In this document: positions 24,245 to 41,555 of the stretch, piece by piece
Layout of the letters: every line of letters begins with the position of its first letter
Numbering within the stretch: position 1 is the stretch's first letter
Assembly: GCF_032062105.1 (NCBI RefSeq)
Contig: NW_026927384.1
Location: 124,001-188,000, forward strand
DNA length: 64,000 nucleotides
Source: Saccostrea cucullata
Taxonomy: Eukaryota
Direction: 5' to 3'
The notes under the pieces: model-generated
Told to the model about the DNA's origin: nothing
The model's database searches: none
The model's input: the letters and a program-made list of their open reading frames with translations, nothing else
Made by a program: the position numbers and the translations under genes

Positions 24245-27200
24245 CTAAGAGTTATTGGGGCTGGGTATATCTGATATTTCTTGTACATGGTCTATAAGTC
24301 CAAATTCTTTGGCCTCCTGTGGGGTTAAGTACTTGTCTCTTTCCATTATTTGTTCTGAAATATACAATCAATCCATGTCCTTTTTAAAAATTCCTACAAA
24401 TTTAATGGCATTGAATTTATTCACAAGTCCATATTTAGCAATAAAAACATTCTTACCATTGCAATTTTTAGATACTGGTAAATTAAGATACAGATTCTTG
24501 TTCCTTCTTTTTATCAGGATCAGATAAACACTTTACAGCAGTAAATATTCAATAACCTCATCAAAATAACCTTGACTGTCCTTGAGTACCATTCTTTAGT
24601 ATTATTTTCCTTTTTGTAGGATTTATATCGTTGATATTGTCAATACACTGTTTATCCACAAAAATCATTAAAAGGTAATTCATGTGATGCCAGAAATAGA
24701 TTTAATATCAGGTTAACTTGTAAAATTACTGATTATACTAATTCTCAATTTCACCAAAACATTAAACCCATAATGTTTGGGTGATCCTGATTCAAGGTCA
24801 TAGCTACGAGGTTGTGAGGCATATGGAACACAAAACAGTACAACTCAGCTCTGTAAGAAACTGGGACTTCAATTTTTAATTCCTTAGAACTAAGACTCTG
24901 TCTGCCTAAGGAACATAATGAAAAGCTGCCATGTGGAATCATACAAAATACTTTATAACTACATTTCCTTTTAACTGAGTTCATTATAATCAAGTCTTAC
25001 TGTTTCTGGATTCATTCTTATTAAAGGTTGAAATGTTAAGCTTTTTATATATGATACATGAAAAACTGACAAATATTATATAACCAATTCAATGTATCTC
25101 TTTCCACCATCCACATTACACAGAAAATCAGCTAATAAGGAAAGTAGTGGAGCCCTACCTATGGTTTCATATGGCATCTTGGTATGTTGGACATAAATCT
25201 CATTCAGTCGTCGTTTGACTTTCTGTAAATGTTCTGCCTGTATCTGTATATCTGTCACCTGGCCCTGAATAAACAAAAAACAGCCGTCAATGAATTGTTT
25301 AGTAAAACTCACTTATAACGGAGAGGTATGGATGGACGATTATAATACTGTATGTGTACATAATTTGACAAATTCAAAATTTAGCGCAATCAATGGATAT
25401 AGAGTTATTGGCGTAATCATGAATTAGCGCTATACACATATTCTATTTATAAATGAATTAGTAGCGATATTCATGAATTAGTGCATCATTGTCTGCGCCA
25501 AGGCCAATAAAATATGAAGCCTGCTATTTTAAGTATAGTAACAGTATGCTTACAATGTTACATCCAATGAGTTTACAAATATACTCTGATATCTCCTACA
25601 AGGATATCTTGAATACATGGATATGTCGAATGATTCCTGATCAAGTATTTCATTAGTATCTCTACCCTTAATATCTTGAATCCTCTGATATCACGAAGTT
25701 TTTTCTTGGTCCTATCAAATTCGAGATATAGAGGTTGGACTGTATTTAAAGCCATGGGGATTGAAAATCACATTGCTATAAGCACCAATAAGTTATAAGT
25801 AAATTCACTTTATTAAAGCATGTTTCACTATATCAGTTCTTTTGCAGAAATACAGTTGTACATGTACATCATAAAATATTCAAAAAACAGACAAATAATT
25901 TTTAATCTACATTCTCTGCCCTTTGAAAAATCAAAGTACCAAATTCAAATTTACTTACATCATTTTTTCAATGCACAGAAGAGAGATATAAAGAGTTAGA
26001 CAACTCCAGCTCCTCCTGATGCTTGTAACTTACCAAGCACACGCTAAAAACTGTCTCCTTTCCAAATACATATGATGTATGTAACCTTATATCCAAGCAT
26101 TTTCTGATGATCATGACCCCTGTTGCCTGTAACCTACCCCAGCACTTCCTCCTGCTGTCACCTACCCTGGCACCTCAAGATCCTACACTGTAATCTATCA
26201 AACATTAGCTAATCCGCAACCCTACCCTAGCACCTTCTGATGAGAGTAATCTACCCTGGCACCTGCTGATGCCTGTAAACTTCCCTACTGAAGCAAGCTG
26301 TATTAAGCTACCCTGGTTCCCCTCTGACCTGTAGCCTTCTGATGTCTGTATAGTACCCCAACACTTCTAAAGCCTGTAACTTATCCCGGCACCCCCTGAA
26401 GCCTGTAACTTACCCCACACCCCCTGAATCCTGTACATATGTAACTTACCCCGGCACCCCCTGAAGGCTGATGCACCATTATTGTGGAGTTAGGTAGAGC
26501 TTTCCTCATTCCTGGGGCACCAGCTGCCAAAAGAAAGGCTCCCATACTGCAGGCCTGGCCCAGACACCAGGTAGCCACTGGAGGGGTGATATACTGCATT
26601 GTGTCATAAATCCCTAGCCCCTGTGTCACAATCCCTCCAGGGGAGTTAATGTACATGTGGATTGGCTCTTTGGAGTTTTGGAACTGCAGGAAAAGAAGTT
26701 GGGCCACAACTGCTGATGCCATTTCCTCTGTCACCTGAACAAAACATAAATGAAAAAAAAAATATTGTGATAACTGACACTGTTCCAAAATTCTTTCATT
26801 AACATGTTGACCAAGAGATATTCATAGAAAAACAAGCTAGTTTTTTTTTTAATACAGCTGCATGCACAAGCAATTTCAAAGAATTTTTGCCTTTCACTTT
26901 TGGTGTCTACGTGATTTAAATGCAATTAATTACAGTATATTGCAACTGTCTTGTTTGTTTGTCTTGTTGGTCGGTCCTTCATTCAAAAAAAAGATTAAAG
27001 TGTTTGCATTAAATAAAGTTATGATCAAGATTAAATTGTCCTACATCAATTCTTAAGATTAAAATCATATAATGATGCATCCCAAAGGTCTCGTCACAAG
27101 TAATTAATAAAATTTGAAAGCAATTCTGAATTGCTGAAGTGCCTTAGTGGAGAAAGATTATGAGAACTCTAATACAGAAAAGAATCTTTAGATAATCTTT

Positions 27201-27859
27201 CCAGATTTGATTCAATGACATGTATTCACTGAAATCAAGTTCTGTCAAATAGATCTGAACAGAAATGAATCCTTTACTGCTGAGAGGACTTACTGGACCA
27301 AACACACACACGATCCTACTGATGAGGAGTCTGGAGTAAATGTCGTAAGCCCGCTCTCCTCCGTCTCCCTTCTCTATCACGATAGGAACTCGGTAAAATC
27401 GACATCCTACTGGCCGAAGTAACTGATCACAGAGAAACTGAAATATTAAACCCACCATCAGACATGCCAAAGGAAGGATGATTTTATTGAAATGAGTATT
27501 CAAAATTGAAATTGCAAAAATATATTGTTATTTGTCATGTTTGTTGCAGATAACAGGGGTAAAAAATACAGGATTTACCTGGATTTTACTTAATTATGAA
27601 TCCTTAAATACTCAGCTCTATTGTAATCAAAATAAAACAAAAAAATGTAAGCTGCATGCTGGCAAGTTCTGAAGATCATGAACCATGAGACTTGCATAAG
27701 CTGATAAGACAGTATAAATGCATTTAAAAAATAAAATTTAAGCTTAATTACACTTTCTAAGCATTATTAAAGAGTTAAACCATATAAACAAATACTAGAT
27801 CGATGTAATCCTAGCGGGAGATTTCTTACTTTTGATGAATGTCGTATCAAAGACAGCAT
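24245..27859 (-). CDS. CLPP: ATP-dependent Clp protease proteolytic subunit, mitochondrial (exons 27859-27830, 27422-27294, 26734-26450, 25264-25159, 24354-24245)
   Basis: [38 protein letters not shown], catalytic QACSMG / MVHQP / [19 protein letters not shown]. Basic transit-peptide-like N-terminus [18 protein letters not shown]. All introns GT-AG with consistent phases. Confidence 0.95.
26005..26470 (-). repeat. ~29-bp tandem repeat anchored on the ClpP exon 3 donor, decaying into the intron
   Basis: Minus-strand unit caggcttcagggggtgccggg|gtaagtta, repeated with increasing divergence. Confidence 0.75.
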
Positions 27860-27930
27860 GTTTCGTCTGTCAATGTTGTGCTTACTTTTACCAAACGCGC
27901 GTGTTACGATTTTACTCTTCACTTCCGGTA
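27860..27930. promoter_or_regulatory. Probable bidirectional promoter (ClpP / CARD-TPR gene)
   Basis: ClpP ATG at 27859 (-). ETS-like ACTTCCGG (27921-27928) overlaps a + strand donor G|GTAAGA. Acceptor ttttag|G lies immediately before the ATG at 28401. Confidence 0.5.
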
Positions 27931-28400
27931 AGAAACTCGCGTGTAGCAGAACATTAGTTGAGCTCGGCAACCCTGCAAAATGTTTTGACGATTTAGAAAA
28001 AAAAATATTGGATAACACTTAGCAGACAAAATGTAAGCATGAAGTACTTATACATCTAGATTTTTTTTAATCAATTGAACTAGATTGTATTTTCTATATT
28101 ATTTGAAAAAACACCGAAAATGTGTGGTTGCTAGGGCCACTTGCAGGTGCTCGAAACCATTTTACATGTTGTATACCGAGTAGCTATACTTTCAATAATG
28201 TGGAGAAGAAATGGAAATAATAAATCAAAACTTTTTAATAAGACTTTTATAAAAAAGATTTTTTGGGGTAATACTAGTATTTGTTTACAGATTCTATAAA
28301 ACAGGGTATGTCACTATGTGTAGACCACTAAAAACAAATGTTTATGTTATTCTAAAAAATGTATGAGCTTACAATTTTGTTTTAAAAAAATTGTTTTAGG

Positions 28401-31400
28401 ATGACAGAGTCATTACACAGTGAGTCGGGTGTTGACAGACAAAATATAATGCGTCTGAGAATCAACAGAATTGCTCTGGTGCAGGAACTGCGAACTGAAC
28501 ATATCATTAACCATTTACTGCAGACGGGAGTATTATCCGAGTTTGACCGTGAACGCATAGACCGAGGAACAACACCAGCAGATAAAGCCAGGAGACTTGT
28601 AGACATTGTAACAACTAAAACACATGTACCAGACTGGTATAATATATTTAGACAATCCATCTTATCCCCAGAGGGAGCTAACGCTGAGACAAAGAAGCGG
28701 TATCGCTCGCTCGTAGAGTTCCTTGATAACACTGTCATACACCGCCCAGTGTCTCAATCCTCAAAATTCAGCGGTAGCTCCACTGCCTCCATGAAACTGC
28801 CACATTATGAACCACTGCCAGAAATCTCAGACCAACAGAAGGGAAGGACTAGGGCCGAGGGCCATAATTACACCAAGAAACGAATGGAGGAGGAACTGAT
28901 GATGGAGAAGGGGGCCAGAGATAATGCCCCGGAGAGAGACGATAAGGGAGTGGTCAGCCGTGACAAACCACCCACCACCATGACACTGGTCAAAGGGTTC
29001 TTCCAGCAGTGGGTCGCCACTCCTGACAACTTCAGATCCCTTCTGCAGGTCTGAGAAATAAAGATTCATTTCCACTACTTAGTGTAGTGGATGTATTTAA
29101 ATTTTCAACAATGTACATATCATTATCTTGCTTCCAAAAACTAGATAATTACAAAGTACAAAAAATTAGATCCATTATTACTCAAAAGTCATTTCTTTAT
29201 TTTCTATTGTGATTTTGAATTATTTTGATTTTTTGTGGGTAACAGATCCCTGAAGATCAGTTCAGAGCGCTTGAAACTTCACAAGACAAATTTGACAAAG
29301 CTCAGCTAGAACAAGAGAGACTTGTGTTTGAAAAGATCAGAAAACTGGAGATGGTAGCGGTACTAGCCAGGAGAAAGCAGCTGCCTGAGGGGTTTGAGCT
29401 CTGCATGTGTGAAGCGGTTCACGATGTTTTATTTGACACAAAAAACCACCACATGTATTTTAAGTATTTGAGGATGTTGGAGAGATCAGACGTAGATCTT
29501 CTCCTTGACATTGTGCAATCCTTCGGCTCCGTGTTGGAGGGGATGGACGTGACCCGTGTGGGATCGGACACCACGCAGTCAGCCATTAAGCTGGGCTTTG
29601 CGTTGATGGATTTCCTTGGTAAGTATGGCTATTTCCAGCAGGCGGAGGGAATAATGACCATCCTCCTGGCTGTCCTCAACCTCTCACACAATGTTGATTC
29701 CTGGATCACCAAGTACAAGGGGTTCGTCAAGCTGATGCATTTCAGGAACATGAACTACGACTTCAGGAAGGTTCAGAACGCGTACGGATTGGTGACGGAG
29801 ATGGAATGGCAGATTTCTATGATGTCGTTTGGACAGGACATTCTGGACAAGACGCCATTTTACGTGGAGATGTCCACCCTGATGCTGGAGTATGGATCTG
29901 CCACGTCAGCCTTTGGTTGGGCACAAAAAGCCATTAAGGTGAGCTGCAATATGGTTCGATTGATCTGTTAATTTTTATTTTAAAAATATTTTATATGAAT
30001 GTTAATAAGAAAATGATATGTAGTTATACACTCTGGTGGGCAATACACAGCCTGTACAAATCAAAATTAAGATTGCCTCTTTTCTAGATGTCTTAATGGT
30101 GAAGCAATTCCTATTATTTAAACTGTACTTAAAGAAGGATAAGCAGAGGAAAAGATTAATTCTTATATAGTAGTTTGATTTTAAAATGCAGAGCTTTAAA
30201 TTGACCAGCCATTCACCCATAGAATTTACCTTTTAAATATTGATTTTATTTATAGTTTTTCATAATCCTACTTTAGCTCAGAGTGAGGGGCTTAACTTTT
30301 AAATATTTGTCAATTAAACTAAAATAAAAGTTTTTTTTTTGTTTTGCTTGTTTGTTTTTAACATATATAGCATAAGTGGACTTCAATTATATATCATCAT
30401 AAGCCAATTCAATTTATTCTTTAAATATTCATTATATCCCTTATAGAGAACATGATGAAAAAATACTGTAAAAACTTTTTCCTGTATTTTTTATTCAGAG
30501 CATGAATCAGGAATCGCCCGCTGATGTGGTTAATGCTCTGTGTGCAGGAGTGATGGCATACTGCGCGAGATGGAATATAAAGAGAGCAGAAACTTTAGCC
30601 ATTCAAGCTGTCCAGCAGGCTAGGTACCTGACTTTATTCTCTCCAAAACAATGAATAATAACTTATTAAGTATATATGTAAAATGAAGATAAGAATCTGA
30701 TAAAACATGTTGCTAGAGGTGTCCCAGTGAAATTAATATTTCATTTCTCTTTACAATTTTCTGTAGGCATCACTTTGGGACCAGCCATCCCTTGTATGTC
30801 AAAGCCCTGCTTCACTTCTCTCATTTCTCCAGCAAGTTCAAACAAGACAGGCAGGCACTCGAGATTGCCAAGGTAACATGTCTACACAGATAATCTGAAG
30901 TTCTATTGCTTCCTTGTGATACACATGTATATGTCATTTCTTTTATGGACCCATACAGCTCTGTTAATGTCCATTTCAAGCATGTCTCTTGGATTTACAG
31001 TCAACTTGTACACAAACCGACTCGTACACAAAGCGACTCGTACACAAAAAGTCAACTCGTACACAAATCAGAAGTCAACTCGTACACAAACTAATGTCAT
31101 TCATAAGTAGGTTTTCCTATGTGATTAAGGTATAGTTTTCCTCAGTGTACAAATATTGAGGAGTCAACTCGTACACAAAGGTTTTTCTTGTACATTTCAA
31201 TCTATTTTATGCCTCTGAATTTACCTTATATACCATATGTGCAGATAGATTTTTTTCCCACAAGATTTTGAATTTCTTAGAAATTAGATCGTCGGTGTCA
31301 ATTTGTATATATTTTTGTTATATAAATATATATTTGATACATAAATGAGATGTCCATTTTTTTGATTCTGTGGATTTAATTTTATATCTTACAATTTTAT

Positions 31401-34400
31401 ATCTTAAACGACATAATAAATTTGATTAAATTGGATTCCTAATTGTTAAATATCACCACAACAAATTTTAATACGTTAACTTTACATTTTAAAAATAGTC
31501 TTCTTTCTTGCAAGTAATATGGATATAAATATATATATTACATTTAGAAAGTAAGAAATTTAATGGCACCATAATGTTTAGTTATTCAAATTAGTAATAT
31601 ATTGTGTAGATAGTAAATTTGATCAAAATACATCGAAACATTGTAATGGTATATCGTATCATTACATACAATTTCCATAAACATTTATCAAATTTATCAA
31701 ATTTAAAAAAGGAATACTTAACTTAAACAGGGTATGATAGAGTAAAATAACTTCTAAAATGTAAAGAACACATACACATTTTATTTAAAATATATGTTAA
31801 ATTTATTATGTTTCAAACCAATGTAGAAAAACCTACACAGAGCAGTTAAATTATAAAAATTAGTGTACTCTAAAGTACTCTGTATAGTAGGACTGTTAAA
31901 AAATTTTAAAAACTTAGTTTTTACAGCAGGACGTTTCTAGCACCATCAGGTGAAGTTTAAAGAAGGGAGAAATTTGGACCAAATTAGGAGCACATTGTAA
32001 TTAGTGTTTGTCGCCGATCCATTTTAGAAACCGCTGCGCTTGTGTTAGTTTAACAATTAATATAATTGGTTGAATTCCTTAGACCTAACAAGAGACATTA
32101 TTAAAATGATAAACCATTATTTAAAGTATAAATTTAAATTTCTTTTCGTCCTTATTTTATTTTTTCTAGATTATACATTATCCATATAAAAATACTTCTT
32201 AACAATTGTAAATAAAACGTTGTGTACGAGTTGACTTCTGATTTGTGTATGAGTTGACTTTTTGTGTACGAGTCGCTTTGTGTACGACTCTGTCTGTGTA
32301 CGAGTTGACTGGACACCATCTCTTGTAACATGTTAGTAAACATATGTACACAGATTTTAAGGTTATATTGCTTCGTTGTAATATGTTTCTTTCTGTAACT
32401 CTGGTTTGGTTATTGTAAACCATCTATTATTTGCGTCATCTTATGCAAATTGTCACGTTTCCATCTATCATTGATGCCCTGGCATACTCTTCTAACTAGA
32501 CAATGATTCCCTTAAATAGCACGAATGAAAAATACCCATTTGATGTGAGTGAATAGGCCATTTAAAATACCTTTATATCAAGATGTCTCTCCTGCAAGTT
32601 ATCTTTCTTTTTTACAGTATACCCTTAGGACTGCCCAGAAAACGTATGGCTGTGAGATGATAGATGTTGCCCTGGCCCATCGGGCAGTGTGTGCGGCCCT
32701 GATGGTCATTCAGGACTTTGAGGACCTGGCGTATTATCACCACGCTACGGAGGCCCTGCGTATTGCCCGGGCTCAGCTCCCAGATCAGTACCACGGAATG
32801 ATGGCCATGTTCCTACATACCTCAGGTCAGTGTTATCTAAGTCTTCTATTGATGGAGGTGGACCGAGTATTTTATCTAAATAAGGTAATAAAATGTGGTT
32901 CATTAGAATAAAAAAAAGATTACCATTTTGCCTTTAGTTTTATGTTTATCAAAACATAACTACTGTCAAATCTTGTTATCCTCAACTGGAAGGGCCTTCA
33001 AAATATCCAGGTTAAAAAAAAAAATGGAAATTATGGGGTGAAGACTTCAAATTCAATTTGACATGCCTATGGTGTTTGAGAAATCAATGTTCAAGATGCT
33101 GAAATTCAACTGTATTTCTAGTTTATGTTAAGTTTATTTTTGTACCTTTTTAGCCTCAGCTCTGCAGTGGAAGGCACGTCACTCATCTAAGGAAGCCCAG
33201 GAGCTGACCCTCAAACAAGCTGAAATCGAGGCCAAACAGGCACTGCTGATCGCCTCTTCCACATACGGAGAAATCAGTCTCCGAACAGCCCAGATGTGTC
33301 AACTACTGGGCGAGATCTACCCCAAAATGGACCAGTAAGTTCTCAGATATCAGTGAATAAGATGTGTCAACTACTGGGCGAGATCTAGCCCATAATGGAC
33401 CAGCAAGTTCTCAGGTATCAGTAAATAAGATGTGTCAACTACTGGGCGAGATCTAGCCCATAATGGACCAGCAAGTTCTCAGCTATCAGTAAATAAGATG
33501 TGTCAACTACTGGGCGAGATCTAGCCCATAATGGACCAGTAAGTTCTCAGCTATCAGTAAATAAGATGTGTCAACTACTGGGCGAGATCTAGCCCATAAT
33601 GGACCAGTAAGTTCTCAAATATCAGTAAATAAAATGGAACATAGGATCTCAGATATCAGTGAATGAGATGGAGCCTAAGGTGTCAGATACCAGTTAACTT
33701 ATTTTATTATACTCTACTGATTTTATTTTCTTTCTTGTGGAGGAAAGTACCGGTAGAATCTACAAATTTACACAAAGATTGCTTATGACCTAAGGTTTTG
33801 TTATGACCTTGACCTAAGGTCATTTGGCAAGTTCAAAGTCACTAAAAGAAAAAAATTCATAATTTGGGTCCAGTTCAGTATGAAAATCAGTTATTATTAA
33901 TCTGTTAATTAAGTTTTCTTTGTTTTATAGATTCCAGCAGGCTGAAGAGATGTTAAAGAGAAGTGTTCTATACATGAAGCTGTGTCAACCAGAGAACAGC
34001 TTCTTCTTAATGTTAGCTAATGCCACACTGGGGACCTTCTATAAGGTTATGGATAAACCAAGGGAGGCCGTCCATTTCCTGCAGCAAGTAGTGAACGCAC
34101 CAGGTAAGTCTCTCCTAAAACATACCCCTACTAAACAGTCACTGTATTATTTCTTACTTTAAAAAGTCCAATAGTTCAACAGACTTTTTACAGTTTTCCC
34201 CGGCTGTCGGTCTAGGAACTGTTAAAAAAGACTTTTAAAGAAGACTGTTGCCCGCTGACTTCATATGGCGCTAAACCGAATTAACTTCACATTCAGTAAA
34301 GGAGTATAACAAAACAGTTATTGTTAGGAGTCTCGAGAAACAATTGACCAGAATGCAAACTGTTGACAGCCGCGGGCATTCCAGTCTAACAAATCAACTG

Positions 34401-34740
34401 TTTCCCTCTACCCCAGTCAACAACTGTTTGCTGATTAAACTTTATAATAAATACAGTTTTTGTAAATGTTTCAGATTGTGGGGTCTATCTGAAGTGGGTC
34501 CACGTCTGCTTTGACACGCTGATCGCCACCTTACAATCACTGAATCGTAACAAAGAAAGTGACCAGTGTCAGATTCATTTGTCTAAGTGGCTCCGTGACA
34601 ATCCCAAATACGACACCACCGTCACGCTCCAACAGCTACAGGAGGAGCCACCTACCATAGAGAAGTTCAAGGACGAGTTTAATGTTTGGGAGAAGAAGGG
34701 GAAAGCCATTATGAGCATGCTGAAGAAAGCCAAAGATTAA
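28401..34740 (+). CDS. CARD + APPBP2(PAT1)-like TPR protein, 799 aa (exons 28401-29048, 29246-29938, 30499-30623, 30767-30872, 32618-32825, 33154-33334, 33931-34103, 34475-34740)
   Basis: 2400 nt, phase-consistent GT-AG introns. N-terminal RLRINRIALVQELRTEHIINHLLQTGVLSEFDRERI..ADKARRLVDIV is CARD-like. AIKLGFALMDFLGKYGYFQQAE, ARHHFGTSHPLY, YGCEMIDVALAH and YGEISLRTAQ..LGEIY..FQQAEEML align in order with recalled APPBP2 motifs. Confidence 0.85.
30998..32311. mobile_element. Intronic foldback-type DNA transposon with modular ~90-bp TIRs
   Basis: CAGTCAACTTGTACACAAA..(ACTCGTACACAAA)n mirrored at 32220-32311. TCTCTTG occurs just outside both ends. AT-rich non-coding interior. Confidence 0.8.
33292..33695 (+). 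repeat. 68-bp tandem repeat x5 (plus degenerate tail) starting inside exon 6 and containing its splice donor
   Basis: Units start at 33292, 33360, 33428, 33496 and 33564: agatgtgtcaactactgggcgagatcta(c/g)ccca(a/t)aatggacca|g(t/c)aagttctcag.. Confidence 0.95.
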
Positions 34741-39896: not shown

Positions 39897-41555
39897 ATGG
39901 CGTCTTCTTCTACTTGGGCACAGGACGTGATCACGTGTGATCTTTGTGACAACCCCACCCAGCAATTCTGTAACAGCTGCCAGGTCAGTTTGTGTGGAGG
40001 CTGTATAAATAAACATGTAGAAAGTCTGAAGTCTGAAACACATGACATTGTTCCTTTTAAAGACAGAAGAGAACGGCTCGTATTCTCCTCATGTGCTTCT
40101 CATCCAAACCAGAAATATGAAGGACATTGCCAACAGTGTGGTGTCCCCGTCTGCTTCAGATGTCTAACAGGTCCCCACAGGGGTCATGCTGTCATAGATA
40201 TGTCAGAGGTGGTACAACAGATGAAAGAAGAAATCAAAAAAGAAACAGAAGAAATAGAGAATTTTATTTCAAGATTCACTCTAAGTGGAGCAGACATTGA
40301 TCAGAAGATATCTAATATGATTGAAAAATTTAAAACAATGGAGAGAGAGGGAGAAAATCTGAGAAAAACCTGGCATAAAGAAGTAGACAACATATTTGAC
40401 ACACTACAATCAACCATTAGTAAAATGAAGGAGAGAAGACTCACAGCTCTCAGATCCCATCAGTCCAGGCTTCAGGATTCAGGGTCAAAATTAGAATTCA
40501 TAATAAACGAAAACAATAAAATCCTGAAGTCCAATAAAGTGTCTGATGTTACAAGCCACAAATCAGAATTAAAGGATTTCAGAGACATTCCAACAGATGT
40601 TGATGTGAAGATTCCTTCCCTAAATAGCAACACAGTCCAGGGGAGAGAACTCAGCATAGAATTAGGAGAATACAAGGCTACTATTACACAGACATCACTA
40701 TCCAGTCTGACAGATGAAGTCTCCATTTTATCTGTGAGAAAATTATTGGAGAATGCTAAAGTTATTGCTACCATTCGTACTGGATTAAAGCCTTTAGGTC
40801 CCATTATCTGTATTGAAGGCGATGAAGCTTGGGCTTGTGGTCAAGACAAGTTCATAAGACGTATTGACATACGTGGATCTATGAAGGAGAAGATCATCAC
40901 CAAATGTGAACCTTATCCAGGTGATATTTCAGTGACCAGTCAGGGAGAACTGATAAACAGTTTTATGAAAAGTAAAACAGTGAACATCATCAGACAGGGG
41001 AGGATAGAGACACTGATTACTCTACCTCTGGGATGGCATCCAATGGGACTGTGTTGTACTAGATCAGGAGACGTACTAGTTTCTTTGCGTACTGCTGATG
41101 GAAGTCGTTATAAAATAGTCCGCTATCAGGGACAAACAGCAACACAAGAAATAGATAAAGATGACCGTGGACAAAATATATTTAAAGGTGGGAATGGTGG
41201 AGTTCTTATGAAGGAGAGTAATAATGGGGACATTTGTGCTGCTGATTTGAATGCCAATATAGTGATAGTGATGGACAAGACAGGAAGAGTCCGATTCCGT
41301 TATGATGGTACACCAGCCAGGAGGAATAATCCATTCCGACCTGTGTACATTAGTACAGACTCACTTAATCAGATCATAATAACTGATCTTAATAATGACT
41401 GTCTTCATATCTTAGATCAGAATGGACAGTTTCTAAAATGTATAGACAATTGTGGACTTCAGAGTCCTGCTGGACTGAGTGTGGACAGTAAGGGGAGGTT
41501 GTGGGTAGGGTGTTTTCATTCAGGTGATGTAAAAGTGATCCAGTACATGGAGTAA
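39897..41555 (+). CDS. RING-less B-box/coiled-coil/NHL beta-propeller TRIM-like protein, single coding exon
   Basis: CDLC..FCNSCQVSLCGGC..H..H, CASH..HCQQCGVPVCFRC..HRGH, heptad region, then NHL-like repeats (PMGLCCTRSGDVLV, PVYISTDSLNQIIITD, PAGLSVDSKGRLWVG). Confidence 0.9.
   Translation: MASSSTWAQDVITCDLCDNPTQQFCNSCQVSLCGGCINKHVESLKSETHDIVPFKDRRERLVFSSCASHPNQKYEGHCQQCGVPVCFRCLTGPHRGHAVIDMSEVVQQMKEEIKKETEEIENFISRFTLSGADIDQKISNMIEKFKTMEREGENLRKTWHKEVDNIFDTLQSTISKMKERRLTALRSHQSRLQDSGSKLEFIINENNKILKSNKVSDVTSHKSELKDFRDIPTDVDVKIPSLNSNTVQGRELSIELGEYKATITQTSLSSLTDEVSILSVRKLLENAKVIATIRTGLKPLGPIICIEGDEAWACGQDKFIRRIDIRGSMKEKIITKCEPYPGDISVTSQGELINSFMKSKTVNIIRQGRIETLITLPLGWHPMGLCCTRSGDVLVSLRTADGSRYKIVRYQGQTATQEIDKDDRGQNIFKGGNGGVLMKESNNGDICAADLNANIVIVMDKTGRVRFRYDGTPARRNNPFRPVYISTDSLNQIIITDLNNDCLHILDQNGQFLKCIDNCGLQSPAGLSVDSKGRLWVGCFHSGDVKVIQYME

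What the first reader, a model, noticed from the sequence alone, without database searches (positions are those of the whole stretch)
28401..34740. CARD fused to an APPBP2-like (CRL2 C-degron receptor) TPR protein
Seen: an intact 8-exon, 799-aa ORF. Its first ~100 aa have CARD-type spacing (L..NR..LVQEL....I.HL...GVL...DRE.I....T..DKARRL.D). After a low-complexity linker, the rest tracks APPBP2/PAT1 motif by motif (KQLPEGF~RSLPENI, AIKLGF..GYFQQAE, HFGTSHP, DVALAH, YGEISLRTA). Known: APPBP2 is a Cullin-2 substrate receptor for C-terminal degrons and, as I recall it, has no death-fold domain. Inference: a divergent paralogue acquired a CARD, possibly coupling recognition of protein C-termini (e.g. 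protease-generated or pathogen ends) to caspase/CARD signalling, or targeting CARD proteins for degradation. I see no convincing Elongin BC-box, which hints at a sensor rather than a ligase role.
Basis: partly seen in the sequence, partly recalled or inferred. Interest (0 to 1): 0.78.

Follow-up and report, generated by a model that had tools for sequence, protein, structure and literature searches.

The report
Conserved CARD–APPBP2-like TPR gene, oyster
This is a real, expressed bivalve gene that joins a caspase-recruitment domain (CARD) to a full-length but functionally altered copy of the APPBP2 repeat scaffold; the same fusion occurs in molluscs, annelids, a brachiopod, a nemertean and a flatworm, sits unnamed in databases, and I found no paper on it.

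Summary
Eight coding exons (28401-34740, + strand) give a 799-aa ORF, and one untranslated exon lies upstream. RNA contigs and raw reads from three studies confirm the UTR junction and six coding junctions, including 29048/29246. One contig runs from the UTR through the CARD exon to exon 5.

- **CARD:** residues 19-89 pass Pfam CARD (E 3e-13). The fold model is closest to the APAF-1 CARD.
- **APPBP2-like part:** a family profile hits human APPBP2 at E 1e-55 over residues 40-575 of 585. A model of the 91%-identical Magallana gigas orthologue matches CRL2-APPBP2 at Z 42.7; the next hit scores 26.
- **Age:** the fusion is not special to this genome. Orthologues with both parts exist in bivalves, gastropods, annelids, a brachiopod, a nemertean and a flatworm. 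They are annotated only as "CARD domain-containing", "uncharacterized" or "APPBP2(-like)".
- **Selection:** strongly purifying (dN/dS about 0.05).
- **Differences from APPBP2:** human residues 1-23 have no counterpart and 24-39 match only structurally. Both zinc-dimer ligands and 16 of 18 RxxG-degron contacts are replaced, mostly by residues conserved within the family.

Most likely it is a CARD adaptor or sensor with its own ligand, not a canonical C-degron ligase receptor. Whether it is a paralogue or the orthologue of APPBP2 is untested. The scan noted a different CARD+TPR family elsewhere in this genome, not this one.

The parts
27913..28032 (+). Non-coding 5' exon. The 3' end at 28032 is firm; the 5' end is approximate.
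   Evidence: RNA contigs carry 120 (X1) and 29 (X4) letters before 28400. Their last 30 letters match window 28003-28032 with one difference. GTAAG follows at 28033.
28400..29048 (+). Coding exon 1 (ATG at 28401). It encodes the CARD (aa 10-111), a disordered linker with the conserved LPxYxPLPxI motif, and the conserved TLVKGFFQQW beta-hairpin.
   Evidence: Pfam CARD, E 3.4e-13. AF2 model of this exon: pLDDT 92-97 over aa 10-110, six helices with a kinked helix 1. Foldseek top hits are APAF-1 CARDs, TM 0.83-0.87. RNA contigs cover 28400-29045.
29246..29938 (+). Coding exon 2: the N-terminal part of the APPBP2-like helical repeat region, including the invariant QLPxGF motif.
   Evidence: Its only PDB hit is human APPBP2: E 2e-6, query 49-231 against chain 57-234. 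Junction 29048/29246 is GT..AG in two contig sets and two raw-read runs.
30499..30623 (+). Coding exon 3 (TPR region).
   Evidence: Junctions 29938/30499 and 30623/30767. It tiles orthologue residues 446-486.
30767..30872 (+). Coding exon 4 (HFGTSHP motif).
   Evidence: Junctions. It tiles orthologue residues 488-522.
32618..32825 (+). Coding exon 5 (DVALAHR motif). It holds the positions equivalent to human Y338, Y341, V342, Y345 and R380.
   Evidence: Junctions 30872/32618 and 32825/33154. Residue mapping.
33154..33334 (+). Coding exon 6 (ALQWK and YGEISLRTAQ motifs). It holds the positions equivalent to human L384, E387, E388, K430, N434, R437 and S441.
   Evidence: Junction 33334/33931. 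APPBP2 395-442 is its top PDB hit but is not significant alone (E 1.1). Mapping.
33931..34103 (+). Coding exon 7 (TPR region). It holds the positions equivalent to human Y468, L472, H476, S479 and Y483.
   Evidence: Junction 33334/33931 and the loose end at 34103 that reads the start of exon 8. Mapping.
34475..34740 (+). Coding exon 8 with the TAA stop: last TPR and C-terminal helices.
   Evidence: Loose-end consensus behind 34103 in X4 and X21 matches 34475 onward, with two differing letters in the 30 shown. It tiles orthologue residues 711-797.
33292..33636 (+). 68-bp tandem array (5.1 copies) that copies the end of exon 6 together with its splice donor into intron 6. It is not part of the mRNA.
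   Evidence: TRF. RNA uses only the first donor, 33334 to 33931.
30998..32311 (.). About 1.3 kb element with 92-nt terminal inverted repeats inside intron 4, probably a non-autonomous DNA transposon. It is not part of the mRNA.
   Evidence: arms 30998-31089 and 32220-32311 are 95% complementary.

Best explanation
This is an intact, transcribed, single-copy bivalve gene for a 799-aa protein with three parts.

1. An APAF-1-like CARD (aa 10-111).
2. A disordered linker of about 80 aa that carries conserved short motifs.
3. A full-length homologue of the APPBP2 TPR solenoid (aa about 190-799).

It belongs to an old orthologous family present across Spiralia.

Shown here: the architecture, the expression, the conservation, the purifying selection and the homology to APPBP2. 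Also shown: the loss of APPBP2's zinc-dimer ligands and of nearly all RxxG-degron contacts, which are replaced by residues conserved within the family.

Inferred: the protein no longer works as the RxxG C-degron receptor of a Cullin-2 ligase. Instead it works as an adaptor or sensor without an ATPase. Its deep TPR pocket binds a different, conserved ligand. Its CARD recruits a CARD-bearing partner, most plausibly an initiator caspase or another CARD adaptor, by homotypic CARD-CARD contact.
For: - **Gene model and expression:**. The UTR junction and six coding junctions are confirmed, and an 1834-nt RNA contig bridges the UTR, the CARD exon and exons 2-5.
- **CARD:** Pfam E 3.4e-13. AF2 pLDDT above 92. 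APAF-1 CARD is the top structural match, TM 0.83-0.87 and rmsd 2.0 A.
- **APPBP2 homology:** profile against PDB gives E 2.7e-47 and 1.3e-55 over human residues 40-575, with the next TPR hit at only 8e-5. Foldseek gives E 2e-19 and TM 0.81. VIA-align gives Z 42.7, rmsd 3.4 A over 529 residues, against Z 26 for the next fold. The ESM-Atlas structural top hit is the arthropod APPBP2 cluster.
- **Conservation of the fusion:**
  - CARD ORFs lie upstream of the exon-2 homologue in two other assemblies.
  - CARD and the first TPR part sit in one uninterrupted ORF in several species.
  - Full-length CARD+TPR proteins occur in Magallana, Mercenaria, Solemya, Aplysia, Haliotis, Gigantopelta, Lottia, Babylonia, Physella, Owenia, Capitella, Ridgeia, Lingula, Tubulanus and Macrostomum.
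- **Single copy:**
- **Purifying selection against the M. gigas orthologue:** omega 0.055 overall; CARD 0.02, linker 0.22, TPR 0.05.
- **Loss of APPBP2-specific sites:** the residue list comes from PMC10614623. The mapping gives C54 to invariant P, H89 to S/A, E387/E388 to Q/W, R437 to Q, K430 to Q, N434 to L, R380 to H, and Y338/Y341/Y345 to K/L-M/variable. The replacements Q, W, Q, L, Q, K, T, T are conserved in 10-13 of 14 full-length members.
- **N-terminus:** human residues 1-39 are outside the sequence alignment, and residues 1-23 are outside the structural alignment.
- **No ATPase:** no NB-ARC or NACHT domain in any member.
Against: - No partner, ligand or phenotype is known, so the mechanism is inference from anatomy.
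- The structural alignment starts at human residue 24-27. Part of the VHL box (alpha2-alpha3) may therefore be retained, and Elongin/Cullin binding is not excluded.
- The pocket mapping rests on profile alignments at about 21% identity. It is stable between two profiles, but it is not a residue-level structural superposition.
- dS is saturated (about 1.4), so the omega values are approximate.
- The window's own joined protein was not searched. The whole-protein model is of the orthologue P0089, which is 71-91% identical per exon.
Confidence: 0.55

Rival explanations
1. It is still a Cullin-RING substrate receptor. The APPBP2-like part keeps enough of the VHL box to bind Elongin B/C and CUL2. 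The CARD then either brings CARD proteins (caspases, adaptors) to the ligase for ubiquitination or docks the ligase on CARD assemblies.
For: - Full-length homology to a proven CRL2 receptor.
- The structural alignment reaches back to human residue 24-27, inside the region the paper calls the VHL box, alpha1-alpha3.
- The invariant LPxGFxxxM resembles the hydrophobic-Pro-x-x-hydrophobic pattern of a Cul2 box. This is my reading from general knowledge and was not tested.
Against: - Human residues 1-23 have no counterpart, and a disordered linker precedes residue 190.
- No [STP]Lxxx[CSA]xxx-hydrophobic BC-box motif is conserved in the family alignment (my inspection).
- The zinc-dimer ligands that organise the CRL2-APPBP2 dimer are lost.
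- The degron pocket is rebuilt.
Confidence: 0.25
2. On origin rather than mechanism: this is not a paralogue but the spiralian orthologue of APPBP2. It gained a CARD at the base of Spiralia, or it kept an ancestral CARD that other lineages lost.
For: - A profile that finds human APPBP2 at 165-192 bits finds all eight exons of this gene but no second APPBP2-like locus in the 1.17-Gb genome.
- The single-exon search also finds only itself.
- NCBI names the Lingula, Plakobranchus, Mercenaria and Gigantopelta members APPBP2 or APPBP2-like.
Against: - A canonical APPBP2 split into small exons, at about 20-25% identity to this family, would fall below the reach. Absence is therefore weak evidence.
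- About 21% identity to human even in slowly evolving Lingula and Owenia, together with loss of every APPBP2-specific site, fits an old diverged paralogue better.
- No canonical APPBP2 sequence was available by reference, so no reciprocal search or tree could be made.
Confidence: 0.35
3. Some other role: a CARD-bearing regulator or decoy that merely blocks CARD signalling, or a transport or scaffold role like that first proposed for APPBP2/PAT1.
For: - Weak profile similarity of the TPRs to kinesin light chains (E 3e-4 to 5e-3).
- CARD-only inhibitors such as ICEBERG are among the CARD hits.
Against: The conserved residues lining the pocket-equivalent positions and strong constraint on both halves argue for a specific ligand-coupled function rather than a passive decoy. 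There is no direct evidence either way.
Confidence: 0.15
4. It is a gene-model artefact: the CARD exon belongs to a separate gene and is not joined to the TPR exons.
For: None found.
Against: - Single RNA contigs in two studies span the UTR, the CARD exon and exons 2-5, and raw reads cross 29048/29246.
- A 797-aa ORF on M. gigas transcript contigs is collinear with all eight exons.
- In other species the CARD and first TPR part lie in one ORF without an intron.
Confidence: 0.01

Closest known systems
APPBP2 (amyloid protein-binding protein 2, PAT1), the RxxG C-degron receptor of CRL2; structures 8JAL, 8JAQ, 8JAR
   Same: The helical-repeat solenoid is collinear over nearly the whole length: human 40-575 by sequence and 24/27-579 by structure. 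APPBP2 is by far the best match in the PDB (E 1e-55, Z 42.7, TM 0.81). The APPBP2-like part is about the same length (about 590 aa against 585 aa).
   Different: - It has an N-terminal CARD and an 80-aa linker that human and arthropod APPBP2 lack.
- Human residues 1-23 (the start of the VHL box) have no counterpart.
- The zinc-dimer ligands C54 and H89 are replaced.
- 16 of 18 degron-contact residues are replaced, including the mutationally essential E387/E388, Y345/R437 and R380/K430.
- Identity is only about 21%.
APAF-1 / CED-4 / NLR-type CARD sensors (STAND ATPases with repeat sensor domains)
   Same: It has a CARD closest to the APAF-1 CARD, at the N-terminus of a protein whose C-terminal repeats could act as a sensor. 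The overall logic, effector death-fold plus repeat domain, is similar.
   Different: There is no NB-ARC or NACHT ATPase between the CARD and the repeats. The repeats are TPR of the APPBP2 type, not WD40 or LRR. How it would oligomerise is unknown.
The other CARD+TPR family noted in this genome (scan note s1-730935: intron-free tandem gene pair)
   Same: CARD joined to TPR-type repeats without an ATPase, in the same bivalve genome.
   Different: Those genes have no introns and lie in tandem. In the profile search of this genome, only CARD-level similarity to other loci was seen and no APPBP2-like repeat hit. They are therefore a different TPR lineage.

Membership tests
CARD (death-fold superfamily, Pfam PF00619) | Sequence match to the CARD profile above the curated threshold | tested here: met
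   E 3.4e-13, 49.8 bits against a cut-off of 23.9, residues 19-89. The same hit is present in 13 of the 15 full-length or near-full-length relatives scanned.
CARD (death-fold superfamily, Pfam PF00619) | Six-helix bundle with a kinked first helix, structurally closest to solved CARDs | tested here: met
   helices 10-21/23-29, 32-42, 47-54, 59-70, 79-88 and 95-109, pLDDT 92-97; all top hits are CARDs, with APAF-1 CARD at TM 0.83-0.87 and rmsd 2.0 A.
CARD (death-fold superfamily, Pfam PF00619) | Homotypic binding to another CARD, or filament formation | not testable with these tools
   Needs co-IP, yeast two-hybrid or a filament assay.
APPBP2 family | Collinear homology over the whole TPR solenoid, with APPBP2 as the closest relative | tested here: met
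   (E 2e-6 for a single exon; 2.7e-47 and 1.3e-55 for profiles; human 40-575). (Foldseek E 2e-19; Z 42.7 against 26 for the next fold).
APPBP2 family | N-terminal VHL box (alpha1-alpha3) that binds Elongin B/C and CUL2 (PMC10614623) | tested here: inconclusive
   Human residues 1-39 lie outside both profile alignments. The structural alignment begins at human 24-27, so residues 1-23 have no counterpart. No conserved BC-box motif is seen. Binding itself was not tested.
APPBP2 family | Zinc-mediated dimer through C54 and H89 (PMC10614623) | tested here: not met
   C54 aligns with an invariant Pro. H89 aligns with S, V or A in 9 of 14 members and with Tyr, His or a gap in the other five.
APPBP2 family | RxxG C-degron pocket (Y338, Y341, Y345, R380, E387, E388, K430, N434, R437, S441, Y468, H476, S479, Y483, Y515, among others) | tested here: not met
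   only V342 and L472 are kept. E387/E388 become Q/W, R437 becomes Q, K430 becomes Q, N434 becomes L and R380 becomes H. The mapping is by profile alignment and is stable between two profiles.
APPBP2 family | Orthology (reciprocal best hit, position in a tree with canonical APPBP2) | not tested
   No canonical APPBP2 sequence was available by reference. One search found no second locus but lacks the power to exclude one.
STAND / apoptosome-type sensors (APAF-1, NLR) | NB-ARC or NACHT ATPase domain | tested here: not met
   No such Pfam hit in the window's exons or in 15 relatives. A disordered linker lies between the CARD and the TPRs.

The most novel reading that the evidence does not exclude
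The family is a spiralian-wide cell-death or innate-immune sensor that works without an ATPase. Its rebuilt APPBP2-type pocket would capture a specific peptide, for instance a protein end made by a protease or a pathogen. Its APAF-1-like CARD would then nucleate caspase activation. That would be a degron-receptor scaffold turned into a death-fold signalling receptor. A related variant is that ancestral APPBP2 carried the CARD and other animals lost it.
Probability: 0.15. Interest if true: 0.8.

Novelty: new variant of a known kind. Interest (0 to 1): 0.5.

Why it matters
APPBP2 is known only as a Cullin-2 receptor for C-terminal degrons. CARDs are known as recruiters in caspase and NF-kB signalling. 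A fusion of the two that is constrained and conserved across several phyla suggests an unstudied link between a peptide-reading TPR scaffold and death-fold signalling in molluscs, annelids and their relatives. These animals, oysters especially, have greatly expanded cell-death and immune gene sets.

The family gives a concrete, single-copy target for knock-down, partner screens and ligand screens. It is also a natural case of a degron receptor whose pocket has been rebuilt. Predicted proteins are already in public databases, so the novelty lies in recognising and characterising the family, not in a new sequence.

Tried and rejected
- **Word search with exon 2:** it found only single-exon ORFs without names, because of the tool's length window.
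- **Word search with Lingula residues 225-814:** it returned only itself. Generic TPR words filled the candidate list.
- **ESM-Atlas search by features:** it gave only generic TPR clusters. Only its structure search pointed to APPBP2.
- **PDB searches with single small exons:** exon 5 gave nothing, and exon 6 gave APPBP2 first but not significantly.
- **P0062 and P0036, the most divergent hits:** I tested them as possible canonical APPBP2 fragments. They are not.
- **Reciprocal search and tree:** no canonical APPBP2 had a reference, so both were left out rather than typing a sequence.
- **Exact BC-box and Cul2-box residues of human APPBP2:** the structure paper's supplement is not held, and the other papers do not give them.
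- **Literature searches:** APPBP2 with CARD, with oyster, and for CARD-TPR in molluscs found no description of this architecture.
- **Joined protein:** Exons were searched one by one by reference. Whole-protein analyses used database orthologues, chiefly P0089, which is 91% identical in exon 2.
- **Gene-model artefact:** considered and rejected.
Full report
**What is there**

Eight coding exons lie on the + strand: 28401-29048, 29246-29938, 30499-30623, 30767-30872, 32618-32825, 33154-33334, 33931-34103 and 34475-34740. All introns are GT..AG. The total is 2400 nt, or 799 codons plus TAA.

Each was searched by reference as an in-frame piece. Whole-protein work used database orthologues.

**Transcription and splicing**

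Public runs labelled with the window's organism were laid on 28300-34299. Logan RNA contigs of two studies show six coding junctions with GT..AG ends, and raw oligo-dT reads of a third study show five of them. The six are 29048/29246, 29938/30499, 30623/30767, 30872/32618, 32825/33154 and 33334/33931.

One 1834-nt contig runs without a break from 120 nt upstream of 28400 through the CARD exon to exon 5. The letters lying loose before 28400 match window 28003-28032, which is followed by GTAAG. So there is one more non-coding exon upstream. The letters lying loose behind 34103 read the start of exon 8.

**The CARD**

- Exon 1 passes Pfam CARD at E 3.4e-13, 49.8 bits against a cut-off of 23.9, residues 19-89.
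- An AlphaFold2 model of the window's own exon 1, made with 25 homologues, has pLDDT 92-97 over residues 10-110. It shows six helices with the kinked first helix typical of CARDs.
- Its Foldseek hits are all CARDs. APAF-1 CARD is best, with TM 0.83-0.87 and rmsd 2.0 A.
- Residues about 113-190 are predicted disordered. A short conserved beta-hairpin (TLVKGFFQQW) follows.

**The APPBP2-like part**

- Exon 2 alone has human APPBP2 as its only PDB sequence hit: E 2e-6, residues 57-234.
- Profiles of the family hit APPBP2 at E 2.7e-47 (16 rows) and 1.3e-55 (27 rows). The match is collinear over human residues 40-575 of 585. The next TPR protein scores only about 8e-5.
- A model of P0089, the 797-aa M. 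gigas-cluster orthologue, has mean pLDDT 82.5.
- Against CRL2-APPBP2 chains, this model gives Foldseek E 2e-19 and TM 0.81.
- VIA-align gives Z 42.7, rmsd 3.4 A over 529 residues, model 191-783 against chain 27-579. The next fold scores Z 26.
- The ESM-Atlas structure search on the Lingula member also puts an arthropod APPBP2 cluster first.

Only the pairing of LPEGF with 'RSLPENI' is mis-registered, because HMMER aligns LPEGF with human 53-60.

**A family, not a one-off**

- The exhaustive search with exon 2 found 61 relatives.
- Of the 15 full-length or near-full-length relatives scanned, 13 carry a Pfam CARD at the N-terminus and the exon-2 homology about 215-260 residues in. P0029 shows no CARD hit at E 0.01 or below. 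The Ridgeia protein was not scanned here and is called 'CARD domain-containing' by UniRef.
- Named members are:
  - bivalves: Magallana gigas, Mercenaria mercenaria, Solemya velum;
  - gastropods: Aplysia, Haliotis, Gigantopelta, Lottia, Babylonia, Physella, Bulinus, Plakobranchus;
  - annelids: Owenia, Capitella, Ridgeia;
  - a brachiopod (Lingula), a nemertean (Tubulanus) and a flatworm (Macrostomum).
- Their database names are 'CARD domain-containing protein', 'uncharacterized protein' or 'amyloid protein-binding protein 2(-like)'.
- Two unnamed assemblies have a CARD ORF just upstream of the exon-2 homologue on the same strand.
- In several species the CARD and the first repeat part lie in one uninterrupted ORF of 417-500 aa. 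This proves the fusion without relying on any splice.
- In the window's own 1.17-Gb genome the gene is single-copy.
- Compared exon by exon with the M. gigas transcript (L016), the eight pieces tile the orthologue's ORF. Omega is about 0.055 overall: CARD 0.02, linker 0.22, repeats 0.05. dS is saturated, so these values are approximate.

**How it differs from APPBP2**

The structure paper (PMC10614623) defines three features of human APPBP2.

1. An N-terminal VHL box (alpha1-alpha3) that binds CUL2 and Elongin B/C.
2. A zinc-mediated dimer through C54 and H89.
3. A deep pocket in TPR6-11 that reads the RxxG C-degron, formed by Y338, Y341, V342, Y345, R380, L384, E387, E388, K430, N434, R437, S441, Y468, L472, H476, S479, Y483 and Y515. 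The mutants E387R/E388R and Y345A/R437A abolish binding. R437M and R380E/K430E each cut affinity more than 20-fold.

I mapped these onto the family through two independent profile alignments that agree in register, then read the columns in 14 full-length members.

- C54 aligns with an invariant Pro. H89 aligns with S, V or A in 9 of 14 members and with Tyr, His or a gap in the rest.
- E387/E388 become Q/W, R437 becomes Q, K430 becomes Q, N434 becomes L, R380 becomes mostly H and S441 becomes K.
- H476 and S479 both become T. The three tyrosines 338, 341 and 345 become K, L/M and a variable residue.
- Only V342 and L472 are kept.
- Most replacements are themselves conserved in 10-13 of the 14 members. 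The pocket therefore looks rebuilt for another ligand rather than decayed.
- Human residues 1-39 lie outside the sequence alignments, and residues 1-23 lie outside the structural alignment.
- I see no conserved BC-box pattern in the family alignment.

**Mechanism**

Shown:
- a constrained CARD of the APAF-1 type;
- a constrained APPBP2-type solenoid with a rebuilt pocket;
- no ATPase domain;
- loss of APPBP2's dimer and degron sites.

Inferred, as the best reading (0.55): the protein is an adaptor or sensor that couples binding of an unknown ligand in the TPR pocket to CARD-CARD recruitment of a caspase or another CARD protein.

The main rival (0.25) is that it still assembles a Cullin ligase and uses the CARD to reach CARD proteins. 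The structural alignment reaches into the VHL-box region, so I cannot exclude this.

Whether the family is a paralogue or the spiralian orthologue of APPBP2 is open. No second APPBP2-like locus appeared in this genome, but a canonical copy in small exons would escape that search. No canonical sequence was available by reference for a reciprocal test.

**Novelty and verdict**

I found no paper that describes a CARD-APPBP2 architecture. The predicted proteins are already public, and some are even named APPBP2-like.

The scan had noted a different, intron-free CARD+TPR gene pair elsewhere in this genome. In one search only CARD-level similarity to other loci was seen, so that pair is another family.

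I rate this a new variant of a known kind. It is of moderate interest (0.5): real, conserved and unstudied, but with no function shown.

Noticed in passing
window 33292-33636: A 68-bp unit is repeated 5.1 times (96% matches). It copies the last part of exon 6 together with its GTAAGT donor into intron 6. The copies read ATCTAGCCCATAATGG where the exon reads ATCTACCCCAAAATGG. RNA uses only the first donor (33334 to 33931).
   Followed up: partly
window 30998-32311 (intron 4): An element of about 1.3 kb is bounded by 92-nt terminal inverted repeats that are 95% complementary, and it has internal 16-23-bp tandem repeats. It is probably a non-autonomous DNA transposon. RNA contigs of other transcripts pile up on its arms.
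   Followed up: partly
window 26381-26785 (-) and 27144-27503 (-): A ClpP protease gene (Pfam CLP_protease, E 2e-43) lies head-to-head with the CARD gene. If the ORF at 27144-27503 (-), which has no Pfam hit, is ClpP's first exon, only about 400 bp separate it from the CARD gene's 5' exon, which would suggest a shared bidirectional promoter.
   Followed up: partly
window 39897-41555 (+): An intron-free 552-aa ORF with two B-box zinc fingers and an NHL repeat (TRIM-like) lies 5 kb downstream on the same strand.
   Followed up: partly
window 15846-16457 (+); protein P0061: A Ras-family small GTPase ORF (Pfam Ras, E 2e-48) lies 12 kb upstream. The Macrostomum member of the CARD-APPBP2-like family (P0061, 1063 aa) has a Ras domain fused at its C-terminus. 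This may be coincidence or a merged gene model.
   Followed up: no
window 3342-4352 (-): A 336-aa ORF encodes a complete protein kinase domain (Pfam Pkinase, E 7e-48).
   Followed up: no
proteins P0103-P0113 (the 90% cluster of P0089): Besides the 797-aa ORF, transcript contigs of the M. gigas orthologue give recurrent 648-aa and 351-aa ORFs. These may be alternative isoforms or broken contigs.
   Followed up: no
G000 C7082:190714-190923 (-), C2738:14044-14247 (-), C7832:3760-3963 (+), C21132:263761-263913 (-): These are the nearest other CARD-coding stretches in this genome by the family profile (E 4e-6 to 0.09). The similarity is limited to the CARD. C2738 and C7832 score identically and may be allelic or duplicate contigs.
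   Followed up: no
family alignment A2, P0089 residues 101-113 and 131-141: The most conserved stretch of the whole protein is the end of CARD helix 6 (Y..LVEFLDNTxI, with several invariant residues). A conserved LPxYxPLPxI motif follows in the otherwise disordered linker. These may be docking or autoinhibition motifs.
   Followed up: no
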